DNA from: Octopus sinensis
Taxonomy: Eukaryota
Length of the DNA stretch: 64,000 nucleotides
NCBI RefSeq assembly: GCF_006345805.1
Contig: NW_021833735.1
Location: 1 to 64,000 of the forward strand
Direction of reading: 5' to 3'
Shown: positions 24,162-62,508 of the stretch, piece after piece
Numbering within the stretch: the first letter of the stretch is position 1
Layout of the letters: every line of letters starts with the position of its first letter
Made by a program: the position numbers and the translations under genes
The notes under the pieces: generated by a model
Database searches by the model: none
What the model was told of the DNA's origin: nothing
The model's input: only the letters and a program-made list of their open reading frames with translations

Positions 24162-25357
24162 TATATATTATATTATGTATGTATACATATATATAATTAT
24201 ATATAATATATCTATATATATATATATATATATACAATAGGCATACATATATATATATGTATATATACATATATACATATATGCATATACATATATATAT
24301 ATGAAAGGTTTTGATGTTCTTGTCACCTTGTCTTCGCATAGACGGTTATTGTTGTTGAACGCTTTCCCTTAATATTAGTTTGACATAAAGGAGAATGTTC
24401 TATTAGCAAAAAACTTTACTCCGGTAGTTGCCATGGGAGAAACTCTCACAGTGGCTTTTTGGTGCAAAATGTACTTGTCTTTATATCGCTTGCGGAGAGA
24501 TAAATCCACTAGATCACGTCATTTCAACTTTCGTTGGTCTCGTCATTGATGGGCACTAGAACATTAGAGACACCAGCGATTCATCCCCGCCGCCATCGAT
24601 ATAAAGGCAGTGTCAGAACAGGCATCGCTGTCCCGATTAACCAGTGAGTTTGTTTAAAAATTTATATTTGCAACAGAGGCAGTATTATATCGGGAGGTAA
24701 TATTTAAACTCACTTAAATGTGGGTGTTCATTAGGACATCTTTTACTGCGGTCTCCGTCTTTATGCATTCATCCATGAACTTAGTTGAATCATTAAGTCA
24801 GCAGCTGTTTTGTAGTTCACTTATCATCTACGTAATTATTTTGCGAAGAGACATATCTTTTATATTATTTGCTTATATTTTTTATATATTACATATTTCA
24901 TTTTTCCTTCATCATTACCTTACTCTTAGTTTATCTGTAGATTTTTCTTCATGTAACCTTCTTTAAATTAAAGACGGTTAATCCCTCATTAACACTTTGA
25001 CTTCATTGATACGAGGGTGCTCATTATACATGCATATATATATACATATTTATATATAATGTAATAATTTGAATTCGCCTTGGATGGTCCCTTTGCATAC
25101 TGAACACTTGGTGAAATTGATTAATAATTAATTAATTTTGCCCTCAATTGTTGAAATTATAATTAATCTCCCTCTGATTAATGCTTCGGATTTTACCGAA
25201 ATAAGCATAGTGTTTGATGATTTTAACCCACGCTGGGGGAAAGGGGAGAACAGAGATTCTTCGCTTGCTTATTTGAATTTGTTGGCACTGTTAGTTGGAA
25301 GCAGATCTTCGAAAGGGTATGTTCTTATTTTCAGTGTTTCCAAATCCAACCAAGAAT

Positions 25358-25414
25358 TTCTGAGCCGATGATAAAAATGTTGTTTTGACTAATCTTGAAA
25401 CGTACGTTCTCGAA
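25358..25414 (+). ncRNA. Putative type I hammerhead ribozyme, family 1 copy 1 (helix II substitution)
   Basis: TTC-T-GAG CCGATGA [helix II] GAAAC GTAC GTT CTCGAA; the AGA arm of helix II reads AAA in this copy. Confidence 0.55.
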
Positions 25415-25904
25415 TAACATTAGCATTTGATTTTTCGATGTCCTTACCCCCAAACTTTTGTGAGTTGAATTAAGCAAACACTATATATGAGAGAGATTTT
25501 CTTTAAGTATTAGAAATAGCTTTAAAAAAGTTTTTTAGCTGCTATTTCTAATGAGTTCAGTATGCGCAAAGTAATTTATTTTAAGCCCTTTTAATATTGT
25601 AATAATGTATAATTTGAATTCGCCTTGAATGGTCCCTTTGCATACTGAACACTTGGTGAAATTGATTAATAATTAATTAATTTTGCCCTCAATTGTTGAA
25701 ATTATAATTAATCTCCCTCTGATTAATGCTTCGGATTTTACCGAAATAAGCATAGTAGTTGATGATTTTAACCCACGCTGGGGGAAAGGGGAGAACAGAG
25801 ATTCTTCGCTTGCTTATTTGAATTTGTTGGCACTGTTAGTTGGAAGCAGATCTTCGAAAGGGTATGTTCTTATTTTCAGTGTTTCCAAATCCAAACCAAG
25901 GAAT

Positions 25905-25961
25905 TTCTGAGCCGATGATAGAAATGTTGTTTTGACTAATCTTGAAACGTACGTTCTCGAA
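25905..25961 (+). ncRNA. Putative type I hammerhead ribozyme, family 1 copy 2
   Basis: Helix I TTC(T)GAG/CTCGAA; core CCGATGA (25912-18); helix II AGA/TCT + GTT/GAC; GAAAC (25944-48); helix III AC/GT with GTAC loop; GUU site ending at 25955. Confidence 0.65.
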
Positions 25962-26444
25962 TAACCTTAGCATTTGATTTTTCGATGTCCTTACCCCCAA
26001 ACTTTTGTGAGTTGAATTAAGCAAACACTATATATGAGAGAGATTTTCTTTAAGTATTAGAAATAGCTTTAAAAAAGTTTTTTAGCTGCTATTTCTAATG
26101 AGTTCAGTATGCGGCAAGTAATTTATTTTACTAAGCCCTTTTATATAATGTAATAATTTGAATTCGCCTTGAATGGTCCCTTTGCATACTGAACACTTGG
26201 TGAAATTGATTAATAATTAATTAATTTTGCCCTCAATTGTTGAAATTAAATTAATCTCCCTCTGATTAATCTTCGGATTTTACCGAAATAAGCATAGTGT
26301 TTGATGATTTTACCCACGCTGGGGGAAAGGGGAGAACAGAGATTCTTCGCTTGCTTATTTGAATTTGTTGGCACTGTTAGTTGGAAGCAGATCTTCGAAA
26401 GGGTATGTTCTTATTTTCAGTGTTTCCAAATCCAACCAAGGAAT

Positions 26445-26500
26445 TTCTGAGCCGATGATAGAAATGTTGTTTTGACTATCTTGAAACGTACGTTCTCGAA
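26445..26500 (+). ncRNA. Putative type I hammerhead ribozyme, family 1 copy 3
   Basis: Same motif as copy 2 with a 1-nt deletion in helix II. Confidence 0.6.
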
Positions 26501-26988
26501 TAACCTTAGCATTTGATTTTTCGATGTCCTTACCCCCAAACTTTTGTGAGTTGAATTAAGCAAACACTATATATGAGAGAGATTTTCTTTAAGTATTAGA
26601 AATAGCTTTAAAAAAGTTTTTTAGCTGCTATTTCTAATGAGTTCAGTATGCGGCAAAGTAATTTATTTTACTAAGCCCTTTTATATAATGTAATAATTTG
26701 AATTCGCCTTGAATGGTCCTTTGCATACTGAACACTTGGTGAAATTGATTAATAATTAATTAATTTTGCCCTCAATTGTTGAAATTATAATTAATCTCCC
26801 TCTGATTAATGCTTCGGATTTTACCGAAATAAGCATAGTGTTGATGATTTTAACCCACGCTGGGGGAAAGGGGAGAACAGAGATTCTTCTTGCTTGCTTA
26901 TTTGAATTTGTTGGCACTGTTAGTTGGAAGCAGATCTTCGAAAGGGTATGTTCTTATTTTCAGTGTTTCCAAATCCAAACCAAGGAAT

Positions 26989-27044
26989 TTCTGAGCCGAT
27001 GATAGAAATTTGTTTTGACTAATCTTGAAACGTACGTTCTCGAA
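26989..27044 (+). ncRNA. Putative type I hammerhead ribozyme, family 1 copy 4
   Basis: Same motif as copy 2 with a 1-nt deletion in helix II. Confidence 0.6.
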
Positions 27045-27419
27045 TAACCTTAGCATTTGATTTTTCGATGTCCTTACCCCCAAACTTTTGTGAGTTGAAT
27101 TAAGCAAACACTATATATGAGAGAGATTTTCTTTAAGTATTAGAAATAGCTTTAAAAAAGTTTTTTAGCTGCTATTTCTAATGAGTTCAGTATGCGGCAA
27201 AGTAATTTATTTTACTAAGCCCTTTTATATAATGTAATAATTTGAATTCGCCTTGAATGGTCCCTTTGCATACTGAACACTTGGTGAAATTGATTAATAA
27301 TTAATTAATTTTGCCCTCAATTGTTGAAATTATATATATATACATATATAAACATATATATACATATAAGCATATATATGTAAACATATATATATATATA
27401 ACATACACATATATATATA

Positions 27420-27470
<51 letters not shown>

Positions 27471-27529
27471 CATATATATCTGTGTGTGTGTACATGTAGA
27501 AATAATAGAGATTCAGTTGAATTAGGTAC

Positions 27530-28630
27530 TTAAGTTGAAGCACCACGCTATTGCGGTATTTTCCGTACAACTCAAGGTAAGGTGAATAAAATCAAAAGAA
27601 GAAACAAGCTTCTCTGCTTCCCAAAGATACAACAGAAATTCTTCCCGGAAGACAGTTAGAATCTCATACTCTGCTCTCCTTAATATGGGTACCATTTATA
27701 GTAGGATTAAATAGAAAGAATATTAAATTAGCAAGAGGTAGTAATAATAATAATGTTAATGTCAACACTAATTTAAACCCCTACATTGTGAATAATATTA
27801 ATATTCACAATGTATGGGTTTAAATTTTCTACGTCACCATTATATATAATATTAATTGTGAAGTAGAAAATAGAAACAGCGGTACTACTGCTTCTAATAT
27901 ATACAATATAGGCTGCAGCTCTGGGGTTTATACTAGCTCAGGGACTACTAATACGCCTGATGATACTGGGATGAATGTGAATGATACTACAATTGAAGGG
28001 TGGAGAGATAATACCAGATATGAAAATAACACATACAATAGTAGTAGTAGGATTAATATTAATAGTAATATTAATAATAATAAGGGTATGAATATCAATA
28101 ATATTAATAAGTAGTAATTCGCCTAGTGGCAATTGTAGGGTCAAATCCCACTGTCCGTTATTAGGCCGATGTCTAATACAAAACGTAATCTATAAGTGTA
28201 CAATCACAACTGTAGCTGGTAACTTTGTATATATAGGATGTTCAATAAATATGAAAAAATGCATTAATAATCAATTTTCATATTTTAGGCTCAAACGCAA
28301 GGCCAATTGTACGTCCTTATCTGGCAAGATTTGGGAACTGAAGGAAAGCGGAATCGAATTTAGCCTTAAATGGGATATTATAGGGAAAGCTAAGCCTTAT
28401 AGAGATAGTCGGTACGGGTGCGAGTTGTGTTTTATGGAAACGTATGAAAGTTTTAACTATAGGGACAAGAGCAACCTGGTTAATAATAGATTAGACTATG
28501 CATACATAGTGTCACACGTGCATTTAAACATTTTCGAAATCAACGTTTTTTGGTGCTGCACTTGAACCTAGACAGGGGAAATTAATTCTAGTGTCGTATA
28601 TGATGGGAACTTACCCACTAGTATTATATA
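27530..28630 (+). mobile_element. Penelope-like element 3' remnant (thumb linker, Asn-rich spacer, GIY-YIG)
   Basis: RKTVRISYSALLNMGTI at ~27650-27700, then from 28131 in frame NCRVKSHCPLLGRCLIQNVIYKCTITTVAGNFVYIGCS...TSLSGKIWELKESGIEFSLKWDIIGKAKPY...CELCFMETY...LVNNR, the classic PLE GIY-YIG. Confidence 0.88.
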
Positions 28631-30322
28631 TAAGTTAGATATATTTTCTTACACTTCTTTAGAATTTCTTTAGAATTTCTTATTATTGTGTTTTCTTATT
28701 TTGATACCTTTACCTATTAACCTCTTATCTCTTGTAAGTTATTAATGCTCTTAAAGGGAAATATAAACTTTCTAGTTACTTAAGTCTAGAAGAGTTGATT
28801 ATAACATACCCAAAATAAAGTACAAATGTTTGTGCATATTTGCATGTGTTCACATAGCTAAATATGTATATGTATCTGTGTACAACTTATTTTCCCGATT
28901 TTTTTCTGATTCTTACCTTATAACTAATATAAAGATAGCATGATTTATCGCCCCAGTATTCCATAAATAAATACCCAGAGCAATCTTTATAGAAATCACC
29001 TTATAAGTAAATAATTAAGTACTGGTATGAATTTTAAACTAATTCTATGCAATCTTCCCTTTCTAATGTTGAAAATTGGTATATATACACAGTTTATCTA
29101 TTCTGTTTATAATATCATTTTTAGTAATCTTAAATTTTTATCTTCATACAACATAACAATATTGTTTATATACAATCATCCATTGTACCCCACGATAATT
29201 TCCTCTGTATTAACATCATAGGTTTTATTAGCGTCTTCCTCCTTTAAATGGTAATTAACATCATGATTTATGGTCTTCCACAACCCATCCTCCTTTATGG
29301 ACAGTTACTTATACATTTTCTAAATCATGACAATATGTATTACCATACCCAACTATAAACTGTCAACACACTCCGTCTATCCTTTCTAAACAGCCACTGT
29401 CCTCAAACCTTAGATTAGGTAGTTGATAAAAAAAAGCAAACCACAATCATTTACAAGCTATGACCCTAACAAACTTCATACAGTTCTTAGAAGTGTAGTA
29501 TATTCTGAGTCACATTAGTAGCAACATGGACTTTCTCCCTCTTCTTGCTCTATTAGAGACTTTGAGCGAAATTATATTGTGTCCAACTGATTAAAAAATT
29601 CTCTTTATTTAAGCATTTATTTGCATTTAAATTGATGTAATGATTGCATTGTTCAATTAAATGGAACCGCTTGAAACGATCGTACGGCATCACCTCTTGA
29701 TATCCTGTTGCTTATTTTGATTATATATACATACATACATACATATATATATATACATACATACTCACACAGACACACACACACATACACACACACACAC
29801 ACACCACACACATACACAGATATTATATATATATATAATTTGTTTTTAATGTTTTTACCCCCATACCTTCGTGGGTTATTTTGAGTAAACACTATCTGAG
29901 AGAAATTTTCTTTAAGTATTAGAAATGGCTAAAAAATCTTTTTTTGGCTGCTATTTCTAATGAGTTAGTATGTGGCAAAGTATTTTATTTTACTAAGCCC
30001 TTTTATACAATGTAAATTTGAATTCGCCTTAAATGGTCCCTTACATACTGAATACTTGGTGAAATTGATTAATAGCTAATTAATTTTACCCTCAATTGTT
30101 GAAATTATAATTCATTTCTCTCTGTTTAATGCCTCGGTTTTCACCGATAAAATATGGTGTTTTTACAGTCTGACCCACGTGGGTGGAAGGGGGAGAGCAG
30201 GAATTCTTCGCTTGCATATTTTGAATTTGTTGGCACTGTTAGTTTGAACGGTTCTTCTGAGGTGAAAAGTCGCCAAAGGGGTATGCTCCTACTTTCAGTG
30301 TTTCCAAATCCGAATTAAGAAT

Positions 30323-30383
30323 TTTGGGCTGACGAAAGAAATGTCGAATGTATTTGGCTGATCTAGAAACGTACGTTCTCAAA
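30323..30383 (+). ncRNA. Putative type I hammerhead ribozyme, family 2 copy A
   Basis: Helix I TTTGGG/CTCAAA; canonical core CTGACGA (30329-35); helix II AGA/TCT, GTC/GGC, GAA/TTT with TGTA loop; GAAAC (30366-70); AC-GTAC-GT; GUU site ending at 30377. Confidence 0.72.
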
Positions 30384-30879
30384 TAATCTTTGCACTTGTG
30401 ATTTTTTATGTTTTTACCCCCATACCTTCGTGGGTTATTTTGAGTAAACACTATCTGAGAGAAATTTTCTTTAAGTATTAGAAATGGCTAAAAAATCTTT
30501 TTTTGGCTGCTATTTCTAATGAGTTCAGTATGTGGCAAAGTAATTTATTTTACTAAGCCCTTTTATACATGTAATATTTTGAATTCGCCTTAATGGTCCC
30601 TTTATACTGAATACTTGGTGAAATTGATTAATAGCTAATTAATTTTACCCTCAATTGTTGAAATTATAATTCATTTCTCTCGTTTAATGCCTCGGTTTTC
30701 ACCGATAAAATATGGTGTTTACTAGTCTGACCCACGTGGGTGGAAGGGGGAGAGCAGGAATTCTTCGCTTGCATATTTTGAATTTGTTGCACTGTTAGTT
30801 TGAACGGTTCTTCTGAGGTGAAAAGTCGCCAAAAGGGTATGCTCCTACTTTCAGTGTTTCCAAATCCGAATTAAGAAAT

Positions 30880-30940
30880 TTTGGGCTGACGAAAGAAATG
30901 TCGAATGTATTTGGCTGATCTAGAAACGTACGTTCTCAAA
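30880..30940 (+). ncRNA. Putative type I hammerhead ribozyme, family 2 copy B
   Basis: Identical motif; core 30886-92, GAAAC 30923-27, GUU ending at 30934. Confidence 0.72.
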
Positions 30941-31222
30941 TAATCTTTGCACTTGTGATTTTTTAATGTTTTTACCCCCATACCTTCGTGGGTTATTTTG
31001 AGTAAACACTATCTGAGAGAAATTTTCTTTAAGTATTAGAAATGGCTAAAAAATCTTTTTTTGGCTGCTATTTCTAATGAGTTCAGTATGTGGCAAAGTA
31101 ATTTATTTTACTAAGCCCTTTTATACAATGTAATATTTTGAATTCGCCTTAAATGGTCCCTTTACATACTGAATACTTGGTGAAATTGATTAATAGCTAA
31201 TTAATTTTACCCTCAATTGTTG

Positions 31223-31280
<58 letters not shown>

Positions 31281-34560: not shown

Positions 34561-36529
34561 TTAAGTTTCTTTATTGGCCACACAGGGCTGCACACAAATG
34601 GGACAAATTACAAGGTAGATCTTTTCTTTTGTGGGATGAAAAAAACAAAAAAAAACAAACAAACAAAAAAGTGGCGTAGGTTTTCGATCAAAAGGGTGAA
34701 AAAGAAAAAAAAAAGAAAAGAGAAAAGGAAAAAAAAGGAAAATAAAAATAAAAAAGGAAGAAAAAAGAGGAAAAATGGGGGAGAGGAAAAAAAAAGATCA
34801 ATAGGGATCGTGTATCATAGTGTCATGATGTACGGTGTAAAGGGGAAAGCAGATAAGGTTTATCCGTGGGAAGAAAAGCCTACGAAAAAGACCACGGTAA
34901 CCTCGGTCAATATTGTTATATGTTACCACATTTGTTTGAAAGTGGGTAACCCTCTGTTTTCAATTTCTGTGTTCATAGGATTATGCTCAAGGTGGCTTCG
35001 TCATTCATACGTGCCATCCTTGCTACATTCACCCGTCTTTTTTTAAAACATTCGCTAGACAAAACTTGCCTCTCTACTCTCACTTTCCTTTTCAAGTGGT
35101 ACTTGAAGAAGTTGATGAGAGATTGACCAGAGAGGAAAGTGTTTGTCTCCAATCCTTTCAGACGCGTCCACCAGATACATTCTTTCGCCACAGTCACAAG
35201 GATGATGAAAATAGCTCTTCCTTCCCATTTGAAGGAAGGAGGCGTGACAATATTGACGATAGACTCAGCTGATAAACCGACTCGTCCCACACGTGACAGC
35301 AGTTGTTCCACATAAGCCCACAGGTCGGAAATTGTTGGAAACTGCACGAGTGCGTCCAGAACGGTTTCGTCGCTCTGACCGCATCTCGGGCAGGTCGACC
35401 CCCGTGTTTCTCGAGCCGTGTCTGTAGACCTTATCCCGAACGGGTAGCGCTTCTCGGTAGCACCGCCAGACCAGGGATCTCTGGAAGTTGTCCATGGGCC
35501 CTGGCCCGAAAGTCGTCCCGAACAGGCGGGTCAGGTACTCCTCGTCGACGTCCAGGTTCGCCCCGAGCTCGTCGTCGTACCTCCCCTCCACTAAACCCCT
35601 ATATAATGCTTTGGTTGTGATGAAGTCACTCAAGGTCGACCCAGGACGGCAGAGTTGCTTGAGAGCAACGCGACACTCGCGGTGCCATTCGCCCTTCCTC
35701 GGCCTCTTTTCGATCCACGACTGCAGTTCGGTCATGGAGACGAGCTGCGGGAAAGCGTGCCTCACAAACGGCGACCACACCTGTTCACCATCGTCTACGA
35801 AGAGTCTGAGATGTCGCAGTCTCAGCGCGTGTCTGCGCACCATCAATCACGGCATGCCCAGTCCCCCTTTTAACGGGTGTTGACAGCAAATGGATCGCCT
35901 GACCATCGGGACGCATCCTTTCCACAAGAAGCGAAAGAGAATGCGTTCTAGTTTGGTGATGGTAGGGTCGGGACAAAGAACGACGGTCAAGCGGTAGTAG
36001 ATGACGGACGCGATGTACGTGTTCGTCACCTCCGCCCGACCTTTTAGGGACAGTTTCCTCTCGGCCAATTGCCGGGCGAGAGTGACCACCCTAGTCGTTA
36101 TCTCGTTCCAGTTCTTCTCCACTTGGAGGTCCGGACCGAACCAGACCCCAAGCAACTCGACCGGGCCGTTGGTCCAGCGTCCCACGACGGAGGCGCTGGT
36201 GGACGGCATGGGCTTGCTTCTCCAGGTGCCTAGTCGCAAGCCCACTGACTTTTCCCGGTTGATTTTTGCTCCCGTCACCGCTTCGTAGTTTTTCAGTGTT
36301 TCGCCGACCTGCTCGATGTGCTCGTGGCTAGACACAATGACGGTGGCGTCGTCCGTGTATGCAGACACGCTCGTCCCGCATCCCAGTTCTCGCGGGATGC
36401 CCCTCAAAGTTGCCAGCTTCCGCAATAATGGCTCGAGAGTCAATACATATAGAAGCGACGAGAGGGGGCATCCCTGACGGACCGAACGTGCGATGTCGAA
36501 AGGTCTCGATAGATGTCCATTTACGCGAA
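34561..36529 (-). mobile_element. Tx1/L1-clade LINE, 5'-truncated (RT domains 4-7, C-terminal domain, 3' UTR)
   Basis: RSVRQGCPLSSLLYVL, SAYTDDATV, TGAKINREKS, LSLKGRAEV, FLWKG, GGLGMP*, then a decayed zinc knuckle TCPRCGQSDETVLDALVQF after a frameshift. Coding stops at 34973; the T-rich UTR ends AATAAAGAAACTTAA, followed by (CTAT)n. Confidence 0.95.
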
Positions 36530-36588
36530 GATATATATATATATATATATATATATAGATAGATAGATAGATAGATAGATGATAGATA

Positions 36589-36645
<57 letters not shown>

Positions 36646-37191
36646 CAGAGAAACAGGCAGACGGAAGGACGGACGGAGAGACAGACAGACAGATAGGCAG
36701 ACAACGGGGCGGACGGACAGACAGACAGACAGACAGAGAGATAGATAGAACGTAATGGTCGTTAGAGAAAATTTATGACAAAAAGTGTGTCGTTAAAATC
36801 ATAATCAATATGTTTGATAAACACAAACAAATATTTAGCAAGTTTAGCACAATATAACCCGTTTATAAATCACAGTAAGTCCGTGAGAGGAGAGTGCAAC
36901 CAGCGACCGGCTGGCTTCTTCATTCATAAATCATAACAAGGATCAGCTTTCATTTTACTCCCAATTACCAGTATTGAGTACATTTTTAATTTGTTTGCTA
37001 CCACGCAAACTATGCATGCATTAGTATATATATACATGTGTGTGTCTATGTATGTATGTATGTATGTATGTATGTATGTATGTATGTATGTATATATATG
37101 TGTGCATGTGTGCGTGTGTCTGTAATATAAATGTACATGTATGTGTGCATGTATTCATATATACCATGGACTGCATATATAAGCACACAAA

Positions 37192-43284: not shown

Positions 43285-43620
43285 TAATTGATTAGCACAC
43301 TAGTAAAGAGGGCTTTGACGGGAGCCATCATCAACAAAAAATGGTGGTTTGCCTTCAAGATAGCAGTAAAAGCAGAAGCGATTAGGTACAGCAAAACACT
43401 AGCCATAGATAGAAATAGAATAGAGGGTGAGCTAGTTAAGAAGCTAGAAGGGGCAATTAGAAGCGGCATCGCATCCGACGTTTTGGCGGCGAGGTTGACC
43501 CTCAACCAACACTTCAACGCCAAACACGAAGGGTGTGCTGTCAGAGCTAGGATGCGTGCTCTAAGGAACGAAGGTGTTGGAGTCGCTAGAGAGGCCCGGG
43601 TGGCAGAGGCGCAACGGGGC
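43285..43620 (+). mobile_element. Tx1/L1-clade LINE ORF2 fragment (endonuclease-RT linker)
   Basis: [18 protein letters not shown]...[16 protein letters not shown]...AEAQRG matches the W..K..IK...I.YSK...EG..VRAR....E linker of L1/Tx1 ORF2; it ends abruptly in (GATA)n. Confidence 0.72.
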
Positions 43621-43687
<67 letters not shown>

Positions 43688-55041: not shown

Positions 55042-55835
55042 TAATCGTATTTACTCGTCTATAACCTGCACTCGTGTATAACTTGCACTCGTGTATAACC
55101 TGCACTCGTGTATAACCTGCACTCGGGTATAACATGCACTCGTGTATAACCTGCACTCGGGTATAACATGCACTCGTATATAACCTGCACTCGTGTATAA
55201 CCTGCACTCGGGTATAACATGCACTCGTATATAACATGCACTCGTGTATAACCTGTACTCGTGTATAACATGCACTCGTGTATAACCTGCACTCGTGTAT
55301 AACTTGCACTCGGGTATAACATGCACTCGTATATAACATGCACTCGTGTATAACCTGTACTCGTGTATAACATGCACTCGTGTATAACCTGCACTCTTGT
55401 ATAACTTGCACTCGGGTATAACATGCACTCGTATATAACCTGCACTCGTGTATAACCTGCACTCGTGTATAACCTGCACTCGTCTATAACCTGCACTCGT
55501 CTATAACTTGCACTCGGGTATAACATGCACTCGTATATAACCTGCACTCGTGTATAACCTGCACTCGTGTATAACCTGCACTCGTATATAACCTGCACTC
55601 GTGTATAACCTGTACTCGCCTATAACATGCACTCGTGTATAACTTGCACTCGGGTATAACTTGCACTCGGGTATAACATGCACTCGTGTATAACCTGCAC
55701 TCGTGTATAAGTCGCACACTCAATTGAGTGTTAGTACTCGGTGCTTCATTTATCTCGTATACAAGCCATACTTTCTTTTTATTCAGTTAAATTCTCGTAT
55801 AGCATAGCGTGACTTATACATGAGTAGATACATTA
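55042..55835. mobile_element. Non-autonomous DNA transposon (pogo-like ends) whose left TIR contains a minisatellite
   Basis: The left end TAATCGTATTTACTCGTCTATAA matches the rc of the right end, TAATGTATCTACTCATGTATAAGTCACGC. Confidence 0.65.
55060..55717 (+). repeat. Minisatellite, 39 x 17-bp units (consensus TATAACCTGCACTCGTG)
   Basis: TATAA occurs in exact 17-bp register from 55060 to 55706 (646 bp = 38 periods) with no indels; the last unit reads TATAAGTCGCAC. Confidence 0.97.
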
Positions 55836-61449: not shown

Positions 61450-62173
61450 CGTACACACACACACACACACACACACATACAGACACACATACACATGTTT
61501 AAAGCTTACAATGAAATTTATTCCTATCCATTCAACCGAAACGGTGTCTATAATAGCATGTTGTATAGGTGTACCTATGTGCTGTGAATGAGTGTATAAA
61601 ACCATATATGTGTCTGTGTGTGTGTGTGTGTGAGCATTTAATCATATATACAAGTATACACATATATATTTGTAGACCCACACACATGCAAATATATGCT
61701 TATGTGTGTGTGTATAACATGTATACTTAACAACCATAAAATAGCTACTTAAGACTGTTTATGCAGCTGTGAGCACCTACATGGCCATACATTACTACAG
61801 ATATGTACAGATAAGCAAGTGGATATATATATATGTATATATATATATACACATATATAATAACTTGTGTTGGGTGGGGATAGTGTGAAATCATAGGTGA
61901 CAGAGAAATAGTTTGTTGAAATTTTATTTAAGGATAATAAAATCCACGACGAATCGTTTCGAAATAGTGCAGAATTTAAGCTACGTCCTTAAGTGAAAGA
62001 CAGTCTTTGTGCAAAGATTTTTGCCAACATAACATGGCAGTCCTGGTTTAGGACGAATGTTGCTGTAATTTATGTGTGTGTATGCTTGTTGTTGTGTGTG
62101 TTTGTGTGTGTGTGTGTGTTTGTCCCCCCGCCATCGCTTCACAACCGATGCTGGTGTGTTTACGTCCCCGTAT

Positions 62174-62218
62174 TCTGTGCTGATGAAGAGAAATAACCCG
62201 GAAATGGCGATACATAGA
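62174..62218 (+). ncRNA. Degenerate type I minimal hammerhead
   Basis: TCTGTG CTGATGA AGAG-AAATAA-CCCG GAAAT GGCG ATA CATAGA: exact core, helix I TCTGTG/CATAGA (6 bp, one G-U), helix III AT/AT, helix II damaged. Confidence 0.5.
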
Positions 62219-62508
62219 TATTGTTTAGAGCTGAGTGGGGGTGCTAGATTCCTTGATCGAAAATACACGGACACTTATCGTATCGTATAGCCAGGTGGAG
62301 ACGATGACACCTGGGGCTAAATTACAGCAACATTCGTCCGAAACTAGGACTGCCATATTATGTTGACAAAAAATCCTTACTCCAAAGTACTGTTGACGAA
62401 TATCTCTCGTTGTGAGATTTACGAATAGTAATTTTCGAAGTCTTTGTGCATTCCTTATCGTTTTCTCTTGTATTCTGTATTATATACTACATATTCTATA
62501 TGTTTCTC

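What the first reader, a model, noticed from the sequence alone, without database searches (positions are those of the whole stretch)
25053..31226. Two hammerhead-ribozyme-carrying tandem arrays: a candidate cephalopod retrozyme / circRNA retroelement system
Seen: two head-to-tail arrays (~545-bp and ~560-bp units) of diverged but homologous sequence with no shared ORF. Every full unit has, on the plus strand, helix I - C(C/U)GA(U/C)GA - helix II - GAAAC - GUAC loop - GUU - helix I'. Known: type I hammerheads (CUGANGA...GAAA...NUH) with a 2-bp helix III occur in tandem repeats such as newt satellite 2, schistosome Sm-alpha, the ~500-bp Dolichopoda cricket satellite and metazoan non-LTR retrozymes, whose transcripts self-cleave to monomers that can circularise. 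Inference: transcripts would be cut after 25408, 25955, 26494, 27038, 30377 and 30934, giving monomers of ~547, 539, 544 and 557 nt. These could form circRNAs that are reverse-transcribed into new tandem copies. I know of no description of such a family in octopus, but I cannot search to confirm novelty.
Basis: partly seen in the sequence, partly recalled or inferred. Interest (0 to 1): 0.92.

Follow-up and report, generated by a model that had tools for sequence, protein, structure and literature searches.

The report
Hammerhead-ribozyme tandem repeats in a cephalopod
Two short tandem arrays of a non-coding ~550-bp repeat each carry a hammerhead self-cleaving-RNA motif and look like insertions of a "retrozyme", a kind of parasitic circular-RNA retroelement already known from many invertebrates including mussels, so this is a probable new cephalopod member rather than a new kind of system.

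Summary
Array A (25050-27335) has 4.2 units of 539-547 bp. Array B (29838-31231) has 2.5 units of about 557 bp. Units are 98-100% identical within an array and about 84% between arrays at aligned bases (79% counting gaps).

Every unit junction carries a type I hammerhead-like motif on the + strand. It has a 6-bp helix I, a 2-bp helix III with a palindromic GUAC loop, and GAAA...GUU. A relaxed descriptor finds it only here and about 0 times in 200 shuffles.

The motif is atypical:
- Rfam reports no hammerhead family, even at E<=10.
- Helix II is long, with a mismatch at its base.
- All A copies have the core change U4C.
- Only B has the canonical CUGANGA.

The monomer RNA is strongly structured on the + strand (z about -5.5, against -3.2 for the - strand). 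Both arrays end within 5 nt of the same unit position, have different 5' truncations, and are flanked by (TA)n. That fits target-primed insertion by a Penelope-like element.

Best reading: a cephalopod non-LTR retrozyme family, a new member of a known kind. Cleavage, circular RNA and mobility are untested. No further copies could be retrieved.

The parts
25050..27335 (+). Array A: a 5'-truncated unit (starts at about column 190 of the unit alignment), three full units (25409-25955, 25956-26494, 26495-27038) and a 3' partial unit ending at ...CAATTGTTGAAATTATA
29838..31231 (+). Array B: a 5'-truncated unit (starts at about column 17), one full unit (30378-30934) and a 3' partial unit ending at ...CAATTGTTGAAAT. 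This is a diverged subfamily, about 84% identical to A
30316..30392 (+). Hammerhead-like motif, B0/B1 junction. It has a canonical CUGACGA core (30329-30335), GAAAC-GUAC-GUU (30366-30377), a predicted cut after 30377, and a 6-bp helix I (UUUGGG/CUCAAA) with a distal AAGA/UCUU stem
30873..30949 (+). Hammerhead-like motif, B1/B2 junction. It has a canonical core (30886-30892) and a predicted cut after 30934
25349..25423 (+). Hammerhead-like motif, A0/A1 junction. It has the U4C core CCGAUGA (25365-25371), an extra helix II defect (AGA to AAA) and a predicted cut after 25408. It fails even the most relaxed descriptor
25896..25970 (+). Hammerhead-like motif, A1/A2 junction. U4C core (25912-25918), predicted cut after 25955
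26436..26509 (+). Hammerhead-like motif, A2/A3 junction. U4C core (26452-26458), predicted cut after 26494
26980..27053 (+). Hammerhead-like motif, A3/A4 junction. U4C core (26996-27002), predicted cut after 27038
26595..26790 (+). The most conserved domain of the unit, shown here in unit A3 (about columns 100-300 of the alignment, 90-100% identical between A and B). It comprises the UUAGAAAUAGC...GCUAUUUCUAA hairpin, a long-range stem and the GGUGAAAUUGAUUAAU hairpin. It runs up to the point where both arrays end, and is a candidate recognition or priming domain
27336..27500 (.). (TA)n-rich microsatellite abutting the 3' end of array A
31225..31275 (.). Perfect (AT)25 abutting the 3' end of array B
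29722..29837 (.). (TA)n/(CA)n microsatellites abutting the 5' end of array B. A short TA-rich run at 25030-25050 likewise abuts the 5' end of array A

Best explanation
The two arrays are separate, 5'-truncated, multimeric insertions of two subfamilies of one non-coding retroelement. It is of the metazoan non-LTR retrozyme kind, that is, non-autonomous derivatives or passengers of Penelope-like elements.

Shown:
- The tandem units, the + strand hammerhead-like motif in each, and a strongly self-paired + strand RNA.
- A common 3' end, different 5' ends and (TA)n flanks.

Inferred mechanism:
1. The array is transcribed as a multimer.
2. Helix III is only 2 bp and is unstable on its own. The 10-nt palindrome AACGUACGUU lets two neighbouring motifs pair into a double hammerhead.
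3. This cuts after GUU and releases monomers of about 540-557 nt with 5'-OH and 2',3'-cyclic phosphate ends.
4. In the B type, helix I also closes the whole folded monomer, so a host RNA ligase could circularise it.
5. New copies arise when a reverse transcriptase/endonuclease, most likely that of a Penelope-like element, nicks a (TA)n microsatellite.
6. It then primes on the UUAUAAUUAAU stretch of a multimeric or circular template by TA microhomology. This would explain why both arrays stop at the same unit position and begin at different ones.

Array B has a complete catalytic core and is the better candidate for activity. Array A carries U4C and a competing hairpin, and is probably a weakly cleaving or dead copy.
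For: Motif.
- It is present at six of six unit junctions, on one strand only.
- A relaxed descriptor hits only here and about 0 times in 200 shuffles.
- 94.6% of pair cells are paired, against 31-50% in the slid controls. Four pairs change on one side and stay paired.
- The distal helix I changes from AAGG/CCUU in A to AAGA/UCUU in B, which is a G-C to A-U double change (read).
- The 15-nt stretch GAAACGUACGUUCUC is invariant between subfamilies that are 84% identical.

Helix III.
- The hairpin alone has 0 kcal/mol, while the AACGUACGUU self-duplex has -13 kcal/mol.
- This matches the published dimeric mechanism and the "1-2 bp stem capped by a small palindromic loop" of metazoan type I hammerheads (PMC4209133, PMC6155905).

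Precedents for the oddities.
- A U.U mismatch at the base of helix II occurs in the active axolotl HHR_Amex2 (PMC7229834).
- A large helix II with an unpaired base at its 5' end is typical of Penelope-like element hammerheads (PMC4209133).
- U4C occurs in a viable viroid (PMC3088659).

RNA structure.
- + strand monomers fold at -153.3 and -142.3 kcal/mol (z -5.7 and -5.2; 0 of 100 shuffles as good). The - strand folds at -111.9 (z -3.2).
- On the + strand, 20-21 single transitions at paired sites keep the pair and 5-6 break it. On the - strand the figures are 10-11 and 9-10.
- Paired sites are 15% substituted and unpaired sites 24%.
- In B1 the full-length minimum-energy fold contains both parts of helix I.

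Retroelement features.
- GC is 33% and no ORF is shared.
- The arrays end within 5 nt of the same unit position and start at about columns 190 and 17.
- All four junctions abut TA-rich microsatellite, whereas only 13.7% of window positions have a (TA)4 run or longer within 25 nt upstream.
- The flanks of A and B are otherwise unrelated.
- Penelope-like elements show microsatellite and (TA)n insertion bias, partial tandems and 5' truncation (PMC8557442).
- Octopus vulgaris carries 31 Penelope-like families (PMC13282606).
- Retrozymes track Penelope-like elements phylogenetically (10.64898/2026.07.22.740005).

Host. The window's LINE reverse transcriptase is closest to named Octopus bimaculoides and cuttlefish proteins.
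Against: - No Rfam hammerhead family is reported at any threshold tried.
- A canonical descriptor that requires a paired 10.1-11.1 gives zero hits.
- The isolated motif folds no better than shuffles (z +0.5 to -0.5).
- In A the hammerhead fold (-1.3 kcal/mol) loses to a hairpin that sequesters GAAAC...GUU (-11.3).
- All A copies have U4C.
- Apart from the 15-nt invariant stretch, the hammerhead region is among the less conserved parts of the unit.
- Only two independent lineages are available, so covariation is thin. The formally counted helices contain no double compensatory change, and the 500 shuffles are uninformative.
- The excess of pair-keeping transitions is modest: about 80% observed against roughly 57% expected, by my own estimate.
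- No Penelope-like reverse transcriptase lies in the window.
- No other copy of the family could be retrieved, so copy number, transcription and mobility are unknown.
- (TA)n is very common here (7.6% of bases), and the unit's own TA-rich stretches could have seeded the flanking microsatellites.
Confidence: 0.6

Rival explanations
1. Relic or chance motif. The repeat is an ordinary structured tandem repeat or satellite, or the tail of a SINE-like retroposon. Its hammerhead-like sequence does not cleave in any family member. The arrays grew in place by unequal crossing-over, and no circular RNA is involved.
For: - Rfam reports no hammerhead family.
- There are core and helix II defects.
- The motif has no thermodynamic preference for the hammerhead fold.
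- The hammerhead region is not the best conserved part of the unit.
- Identity of 98-100% within each array fits local duplication.
Against: - Even a relaxed descriptor is essentially never matched by chance at this scale.
- The full core is retained in B, and the GAAAC-GUAC-GUU-CUC stretch is invariant.
- The helix III palindrome and the changes that keep helices I and II paired after about 16% divergence are what a used ribozyme predicts.
- Each oddity has an active published precedent.
- The common 3' end, differing 5' ends and unrelated flanks point to insertion rather than in-place growth alone.
Confidence: 0.22
2. One composite Penelope-like partial tandem. Arrays A and B are the two pseudo-LTRs of a single old insertion. 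Its internal part (27336-29837) carries the small GIY-YIG-like ORF (28113-28562, same strand). Each pseudo-LTR was later amplified in place.
For: - The layout is direct repeats with hammerhead motifs on both sides of an internal region, with a GIY-YIG-like ORF in the same orientation.
- Penelope-like elements have hammerhead-bearing pseudo-LTRs and a GIY-YIG endonuclease (PMC4209133, PMC8557442).
Against: - There is no reverse transcriptase between the arrays in any frame.
- The ORF's 2338 relatives are mostly small proteins of 120-280 aa. The ten relatives I scanned against Pfam had no reverse transcriptase.
- Its closest homologue shares only the ORF, not the flanks.
- A and B are about 16% diverged while units within each array are under 2% diverged.
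- The arrays are separated from the internal region by microsatellites.
Confidence: 0.08
3. The tandem repeat is cargo of a DNA transposon, for example the Helitron/Helentron-associated satellites common in molluscs, which insert at AT/TT sites. The hammerhead resemblance is incidental.
For: Both arrays lie in AT-rich targets. The association of mollusc satellites with Helitron-type elements is from my own knowledge and was not tested here.
Against: - No terminal inverted repeats, no Helitron-like 5'-TC/3'-CTRR ends and no 3' hairpin are seen at the array ends.
- No transposase or Rep/helicase lies nearby.
- The flanks of A and B share nothing but microsatellite.
- Variable 5' truncation with a fixed 3' end is a retroelement signature.
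Confidence: 0.05

Closest known systems
Metazoan non-LTR retrozymes (Cervera & de la Pena 2020, PMC7229834), for example the Mytilus galloprovincialis 350-390-bp repeats and axolotl Rtz_353 with HHR_Amex2
   Same: - Head-to-tail non-coding repeats of a few hundred bp with low GC.
- One type I hammerhead per unit on one strand.
- A 2-bp helix III with a tetraloop.
- A mismatch at the base of helix II, as in Amex2.
- A highly self-paired monomer RNA.
- A mollusc host.
- Small arrays. The 2026 preprint reports that 75% of families have seven units or fewer.
   Different: - The unit is longer (539-557 bp, against the 150-450 bp stated in 2020, although within the 51-972 bp range of the 2026 preprint).
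- Helix II is much longer (24-30 nt), with a 3x3 internal loop.
- One subfamily carries U4C.
- Rfam models do not report it.
- Cleavage and circular RNA are untested.
Hammerheads in the pseudo-LTRs of Penelope-like elements (Cervera & de la Pena 2014, PMC4209133)
   Same: - A large helix II with an unpaired base at its 5' end.
- A palindromic helix III that implies dimeric action.
- Tandem, 5'-truncated insertions.
- Microsatellite/(TA)n target bias of the elements (PMC8557442).
   Different: - Penelope-like element hammerheads are usually "minimal" (no helix III) with a short helix I.
- Here helix I (6 bp, internal loop, 4 bp) and helix III (2 bp plus tetraloop) are of the canonical metazoan kind.
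- No RT-endonuclease ORF is attached.
Classical hammerhead satellites: newt satellite 2, Schistosoma Sm-alpha, Dolichopoda pDo500
   Same: Tandem repeats with a type I hammerhead and a weak helix III that cleaves as a double hammerhead (PMC6155905). The roughly 500-bp unit of the cricket satellite is of similar size; that figure is from my own knowledge.
   Different: - Those form long satellite arrays. Here there are two short, dispersed, insertion-like arrays with defined ends.
- No sequence similarity could be tested.
Plant LTR retrozymes and viroid-like circular RNAs
   Same: The proposed life cycle is the same: self-cleavage, circularisation, and a structured non-coding RNA that is reverse-transcribed by a borrowed enzyme.
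   Different: Plant elements have type III hammerheads in LTRs, a primer-binding site and polypurine tract, 4-bp target duplications and high GC. None of these is present here.

Membership tests
Hammerhead ribozyme, type I (Rfam Hammerhead_1 and clan) | Core strand C3-U4-G5-A6-N7-G8-A9 | tested here: inconclusive
   Met in both B copies (CUGACGA). Not met in all four A copies (CCGAUGA = U4C). U4C is a known natural variant with reduced in vitro activity (PMC3088659).
Hammerhead ribozyme, type I (Rfam Hammerhead_1 and clan) | Core strand G12-A13-A14, an A15.1-U16.1 pair, and cleavage triplet N-U-H with H not G | tested here: met
   GAAAC...GUU is identical in all six copies.
Hammerhead ribozyme, type I (Rfam Hammerhead_1 and clan) | Three helices around the core, with helix I open-ended | tested here: met
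   - Helix I has 6 bp (B) or 4-5 bp (A) plus a distal 4-bp stem.
- Helix II has 3 bp, an internal loop and 3-6 bp.
- Helix III has 2 bp.
- 94.6% of cells are paired, against 31-50% in slid controls.
- Caveat: 10.1-11.1 is mismatched (U.U or A.A).
Hammerhead ribozyme, type I (Rfam Hammerhead_1 and clan) | Scores above the curated Rfam gathering threshold | tested here: not met
   No hammerhead family is reported at gathering score, nor at E<=10 on 7.3 kb or 111 nt.
Hammerhead ribozyme, type I (Rfam Hammerhead_1 and clan) | Site-specific self-cleavage giving 2',3'-cyclic phosphate and 5'-OH ends | not testable with these tools
   Needs in vitro transcription of monomer and dimer constructs.
Hammerhead ribozyme, type I (Rfam Hammerhead_1 and clan) | Loop 1 - loop 2 tertiary contacts | not tested
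   An internal loop is present in helix I and in helix II. No 3D or comparative test was possible with two lineages. Published mussel retrozyme hammerheads also lack most of the conserved contact nucleotides (PMC7229834).
Metazoan non-LTR retrozyme | Head-to-tail repeats of a few hundred bp, from dimers to multimers | tested here: met
   4.2 units of 539-547 bp and 2.5 units of about 557 bp.
Metazoan non-LTR retrozyme | A type I hammerhead in every repeat unit | tested here: inconclusive
   The motif is in every unit, but the core is canonical only in array B.
Metazoan non-LTR retrozyme | Non-coding; no LTR, primer-binding site or polypurine tract; GC below 45-50% | tested here: met
   GC is 33%. 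ORFs are 78 aa or less, not shared, and have no Pfam match or homologue. No terminal repeats other than the units themselves.
Metazoan non-LTR retrozyme | Highly self-paired monomer RNA | tested here: met
   z is -5.7 and -5.2, with about 65% of bases paired. The + strand is 15-41 kcal/mol more stable than the - strand.
Metazoan non-LTR retrozyme | Expressed as unit-length linear and circular RNA | not testable with these tools
   No transcriptome access.
Metazoan non-LTR retrozyme | Co-occurs in the genome with autonomous Penelope-like elements | tested here: inconclusive
   No Penelope-like reverse transcriptase lies in this window; the only RT found is a LINE fragment, and only 11 selected window ORFs were scanned against Pfam. 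The literature reports 31 Penelope-like families in Octopus vulgaris (PMC13282606).
Pseudo-LTR of an autonomous Penelope-like element | Direct repeats flanking an RT plus GIY-YIG endonuclease ORF | tested here: not met
   No reverse transcriptase lies between or beside the arrays. There is only a small GIY-YIG-like ORF, and the ten of its relatives scanned against Pfam lack RT.

The most novel reading that the evidence does not exclude
This may be an undescribed cephalopod retrozyme family whose hammerhead escapes current models. It combines a canonical helix I and helix III with a long helix II that is mismatched at its base, as in Penelope-like elements.

Its genomic copies may also preserve a direct footprint of how animal retrozymes integrate. 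On this reading, reverse transcription is primed at a fixed TA-rich site of a multimeric or circular template by a nicked (TA)n microsatellite. That gives arrays with one common 3' end and variable 5' truncation.

If so, cephalopod genomes would hold a hidden population of ribozyme-bearing circular-RNA genes. They would also offer sequence-level evidence for the integration step, which is still only inferred for these elements.
Probability: 0.25. Interest if true: 0.55.

Novelty: new member of a known kind. Interest (0 to 1): 0.4.

Why it matters
Retrozymes are among the most abundant sources of small circular RNA in invertebrate tissues, and how they are copied back into DNA is still inferred rather than shown.

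A cephalopod family would extend their known range to a group whose genomes and transcriptomes are studied heavily for RNA biology.

Its atypical hammerhead shows that standard Rfam or descriptor screens can miss whole families.

The matching 3' ends, variable 5' ends and (TA)n flanks of the two arrays give a simple, genome-wide testable prediction about the integration mechanism and about the link to Penelope-like elements.

It does not add a new kind of system.

Tried and rejected
1. Rfam at three settings reported no hammerhead family. The sub-threshold mir-297, mir-466 and mir-3149 hits are microsatellite artefacts. The CRISPR-DR50 hits are the unit's own conserved hairpin.

2. I tried four routes to more copies of the family for covariation, and all failed:
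- A protein search with a unit ORF found nothing.
- A metagenome scan with a conserved 20-mer gave two chance matches.
- Two 21-kb ENA loci, reached through the LINE reverse transcriptase and not assigned to any organism, held no unit.
- A covariance model built from the six copies found nothing further in the window or in any fetched locus. The weak hit at 62165-62227 has CUGAUGA but no helix III or cleavage triplet.

3. Searching papers for the motif's sequence strings gave only unrelated primers and siRNAs.

4. The idea that A and B are one array split by an insertion is rejected. A ends at about column 305 and B starts at about column 17. The DNA after A's microsatellite is not unit sequence.

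5. Segmental duplication of an array plus its flanks is rejected. The flanks share only microsatellite.

6. The GIY-YIG-like ORF between the arrays as a Penelope-like remnant is not supported.

7. It was replaced by the folding tool's z-scores and single circular folds.

Full report

Yes. Repeat finding, multiple alignment and BLAST of a unit against the window define two head-to-tail arrays on the + strand.
- Array A is 25050-27335. It has a 5'-truncated unit, three full units (547, 539 and 544 bp between equivalent points) and a 297-bp 3' partial unit.
- Array B is 29838-31231, with spacings of 559 and 557 bp.
- Tandem Repeats Finder missed both arrays because its longest period is 500.

At aligned bases, units are 98-100% identical within an array and 83-85% between arrays. 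Counting gaps, the between-array figure is about 79%. There is no other copy in the window.

GAAACGTACGTT occurs exactly six times, always on the + strand.

ORFs in the units are 78 aa or less, are frame-shifted between copies, and have no Pfam match and no homologue.

**2. The hammerhead-like motif**

Read in standard numbering, the B copies are:

helix I (UUUGGG) - C3 U4 G5 A6 C7 G8 A9 - [A.A] AGA / 3x3 internal loop / GUCGAA-UGUA-UUUGGC / UCU - G12 A13 A14 - A15.1 C15.2 - GUAC - G16.2 U16.1 U17 | CUCAAA (helix I')

A further AAGA/UCUU stem lies beyond a 3-nt internal loop in helix I.

The A copies differ in four ways:
- The core has C in place of U4.
- The base of helix II is U.U.
- The tip of helix II is 5 nt shorter.
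- Helix I is weaker (4 bp, then a C.A mismatch).

On the six-copy alignment:
- 94.6% of the 93 pair cells are standard pairs, against 31-50% when partners are slid by 1-3 columns.
- Four pairs differ between A and B on one side and stay paired.
- None of the formally counted pairs has a double change, and the column shuffle is uninformative with only two lineages.
- The distal helix I stem, which the automatic alignment puts out of register, changes from AAGG/CCUU (A) to AAGA/UCUU (B). That is a G-C to A-U double change (read).

Chance was tested with a descriptor of my own.
- It required CUGANGA, at least 3 bp in helix II, GAAA, a 2-bp helix III with a 4-8-nt loop, N-U-H, and at least 5 of 6 pairs in helix I.
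- With 10.1-11.1 required to pair, it finds nothing.
- With a mismatch allowed at that position, it finds only the two B copies.
- With C or U allowed at position 4, and helix I relaxed to at least 4 of 6 pairs, it adds three of the four A copies.
- In 200 dinucleotide shuffles of the whole window the mean hit counts were 0, 0 and 0.01.

The motif is therefore not a chance match at this scale. At genome scale a relaxed descriptor will produce false hits, as Perreault et al. warn (PMC3088659).

**3. What counts against a working ribozyme**

- Rfam reports no hammerhead family at gathering score, at E<=10 on the 7.3-kb region, or at E<=10 on a 111-nt slice around a B copy.
- The isolated 72-76-nt motifs fold no better than shuffles.
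- The B hammerhead fold (-6.1 kcal/mol) is close to the minimum-energy fold (-10.4), and the two share helices I and II.
- The A hammerhead fold (-1.3) loses by 10 kcal/mol to a hairpin that buries GAAAC...GUU.
- Outside the invariant 15-nt GAAACGUACGUUCUC, the hammerhead region is 62-75% identical between A and B. That is less than the 90-100% of the central domain of the unit.

**4. Why the oddities do not exclude activity**

Each one has a published, active precedent.
- Helix III. Metazoan type I hammerheads typically have a helix I of 6 bp, and a helix III of 1-2 bp capped by a small palindromic loop. They act as dimers when copies are in tandem (PMC4209133; PMC6155905). Here the helix III hairpin alone has no stability (0 kcal/mol), while the 10-nt palindrome AACGUACGUU pairs with itself at -13 kcal/mol.
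- Helix II base. [quoted passage not shown] It still cleaves, 22% in one hour as a monomer and much better as a dimer (PMC7229834).
- Helix II length. Hammerheads of Penelope-like elements have a larger helix II with an unpaired base at its 5' end, and some escaped the authors' own descriptor (PMC4209133).
- U4C. This change "considerably decreases activity in vitro" yet supports viroid infectivity (PMC3088659).

I therefore rate the B type as a plausible dimer-dependent ribozyme and the A type as impaired.

**5. The rest of the unit behaves like a structured RNA read from the + strand**

- Full + strand monomers fold at -153.3 kcal/mol (B1, z = -5.7) and -142.3 kcal/mol (A2, z = -5.2). None of 100 shuffles folded as well.
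- The - strand of B1 reaches only -111.9 kcal/mol (z = -3.2).
- About 65% of bases are paired, and 23-29 of 172-180 pairs are G-U.

I took the structure from one subfamily and scored the other.
- On the + strand, single transitions at paired sites keep the pair 20-21 times and break it 5-6 times.
- On the - strand the figures are 10-11 and 9-10.
- Paired sites are 15% substituted and unpaired sites 24%.
- Given the G-U content I estimate a neutral expectation of about 57% kept. The excess is real but modest.

In B1 both parts of helix I appear in the minimum-energy fold of the whole monomer (positions 1-6 with 503-508, and 10-13 with 496-499). The hammerhead's helix I thus closes most of the molecule. 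That is the arrangement expected of an RNA that is cut and re-ligated.

**6. The array ends look like insertion junctions**

- Both arrays end within 5 nt of the same unit position: ...CAATTGTTGAAATTATA | (TA)n in A, and ...CAATTGTTGAAAT | (AT)25 in B. This is inside the unit's own UUAUAAUUAAU stretch.
- They begin at different unit positions, about columns 190 and 17.
- All four junctions abut TA-rich microsatellite. (TA)4 or longer covers 7.6% of the window, and 13.7% of positions have such a run within 25 nt upstream.
- The flanks of A and B share nothing else.
- The DNA after A's microsatellite does not continue the unit. A and B are therefore not one split array or a segmental duplication.

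A fixed 3' end with variable 5' truncation is the signature of target-primed reverse transcription. Microsatellite and (TA)n target bias, partial tandems and 5' truncation are described for Penelope-like elements (PMC8557442).

The roughly 200-nt best-conserved, hairpin-rich domain runs up to the common 3' end. That is where a borrowed reverse transcriptase would be expected to recognise its template.

My inference is as follows. A nicked (TA)n target anneals to the UUAUAAUUAAU stretch of a multimeric or circular template and primes cDNA synthesis there. This step is inferred, not shown.

An alternative is that the unit's TA-rich stretches seeded the flanking microsatellites after insertion.

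**7. Host and partners**

The window is AT-rich (35% GC) and full of microsatellites. Its one clear protein remnant is a LINE reverse transcriptase fragment (RVT_1, E = 4e-13). The named relatives of that fragment are from Octopus bimaculoides and the cuttlefish Acanthosepion pharaonis, so a cephalopod origin is supported.

No Penelope-like reverse transcriptase lies in the window. Octopus vulgaris is reported to carry 31 Penelope-like families (PMC13282606). A 2026 preprint shows that vertebrate non-LTR retrozymes co-occur with, and are related to, the pseudo-LTRs of Penelope-like elements.

**8. Comparison with what is known, and novelty**

The element meets the sequence-level criteria of a metazoan non-LTR retrozyme:
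- tandem units of a few hundred bp;
- non-coding, with low GC;
- a type I hammerhead-like motif in each unit;
- a highly self-paired RNA.

Three reservations apply:
- The motif is reported by no Rfam hammerhead family.
- One subfamily has a core change.
- Cleavage and circular RNA are untested.

Such elements are already described in cnidarians, molluscs (mussel), arthropods, platyhelminths, amphibians and fish (PMC7229834). I found no paper reporting a hammerhead or retrozyme family in a cephalopod, within the limits of the library searched.

I therefore file it as a new member of a known kind. Two points are of some interest: a hammerhead variant that current models miss, and junctions that bear on the integration mechanism.

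**9. Verdict**

- Confidence in the retrozyme reading is about 0.6.

The main rival is a relic or non-cleaving repeat (about 0.22). It is best tested by in vitro transcription of B-type dimers and by a search for circular RNA in octopus transcriptomes.

Noticed in passing
window 28113-28562 (+): An ORF of about 150 aa with a GIY-YIG-like domain (..CPLLGRC..VIYKC..YIGCS..CELC..) lies between the two arrays on the same strand. It belongs to a large family (2338 representative proteins at E<1e-3, mostly 120-280 aa). The ten relatives scanned against Pfam had no reverse transcriptase, and two of them give sub-threshold Pfam GIY-YIG hits. The closest relative (56% identity) is from a Logan assembly (SRR11869390) and shares only the ORF at the DNA level. 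Any link to the arrays is unproven.
   Followed up: partly
window 34973-36704 (-), and 43288-43626 (+): A degraded LINE lies here. It has a reverse transcriptase fragment (RVT_1, E = 4e-13) interrupted by microsatellite. Its closest named relatives are from Octopus bimaculoides and Acanthosepion pharaonis, which supports a cephalopod origin. The second ORF looks like another LINE fragment by eye only, and has no Pfam match.
   Followed up: partly
window 27768-27829: A near-perfect hairpin (arms of about 28 nt, AAUUUAAACCC..CAUUGUGAAUA / UAUUCACAAUG..GGGUUUAAAUU) gives sub-threshold hits to several microRNA precursor models (best 34.6 bits against a 100-bit threshold). It could be a small inverted-repeat element or a hairpin RNA.
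   Followed up: no
window 25509-25552, 26056-26099, 26595-26638, 27139-27182 (and the B equivalents): Each unit holds a conserved 45-nt hairpin (UUAGAAAUAGC...GCUAUUUCUAA, with an A-U to G-U change in B). It shows up as a sub-threshold CRISPR-DR50 match on the - strand. It is part of the best-conserved domain of the unit and is not a CRISPR repeat.
   Followed up: partly
window 55053-55710: A 17-bp minisatellite (ACTCGTGTATAACCTGC, 38.7 copies, 89% matches) produces long spurious ORFs in three frames.
   Followed up: no
whole window: Microsatellite load is very high. Perfect (TA)4 or longer alone covers 7.6% of bases. Most ORFs over 110 aa, and the sub-threshold mir-297, mir-466 and mir-3149 hits, are microsatellite artefacts.
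   Followed up: partly
window 62165-62227 (+): A weak hit of my hammerhead model (18 bits, E about 0.12) contains CUGAUGA but no helix III or cleavage triplet. It is not a hammerhead.
   Followed up: yes
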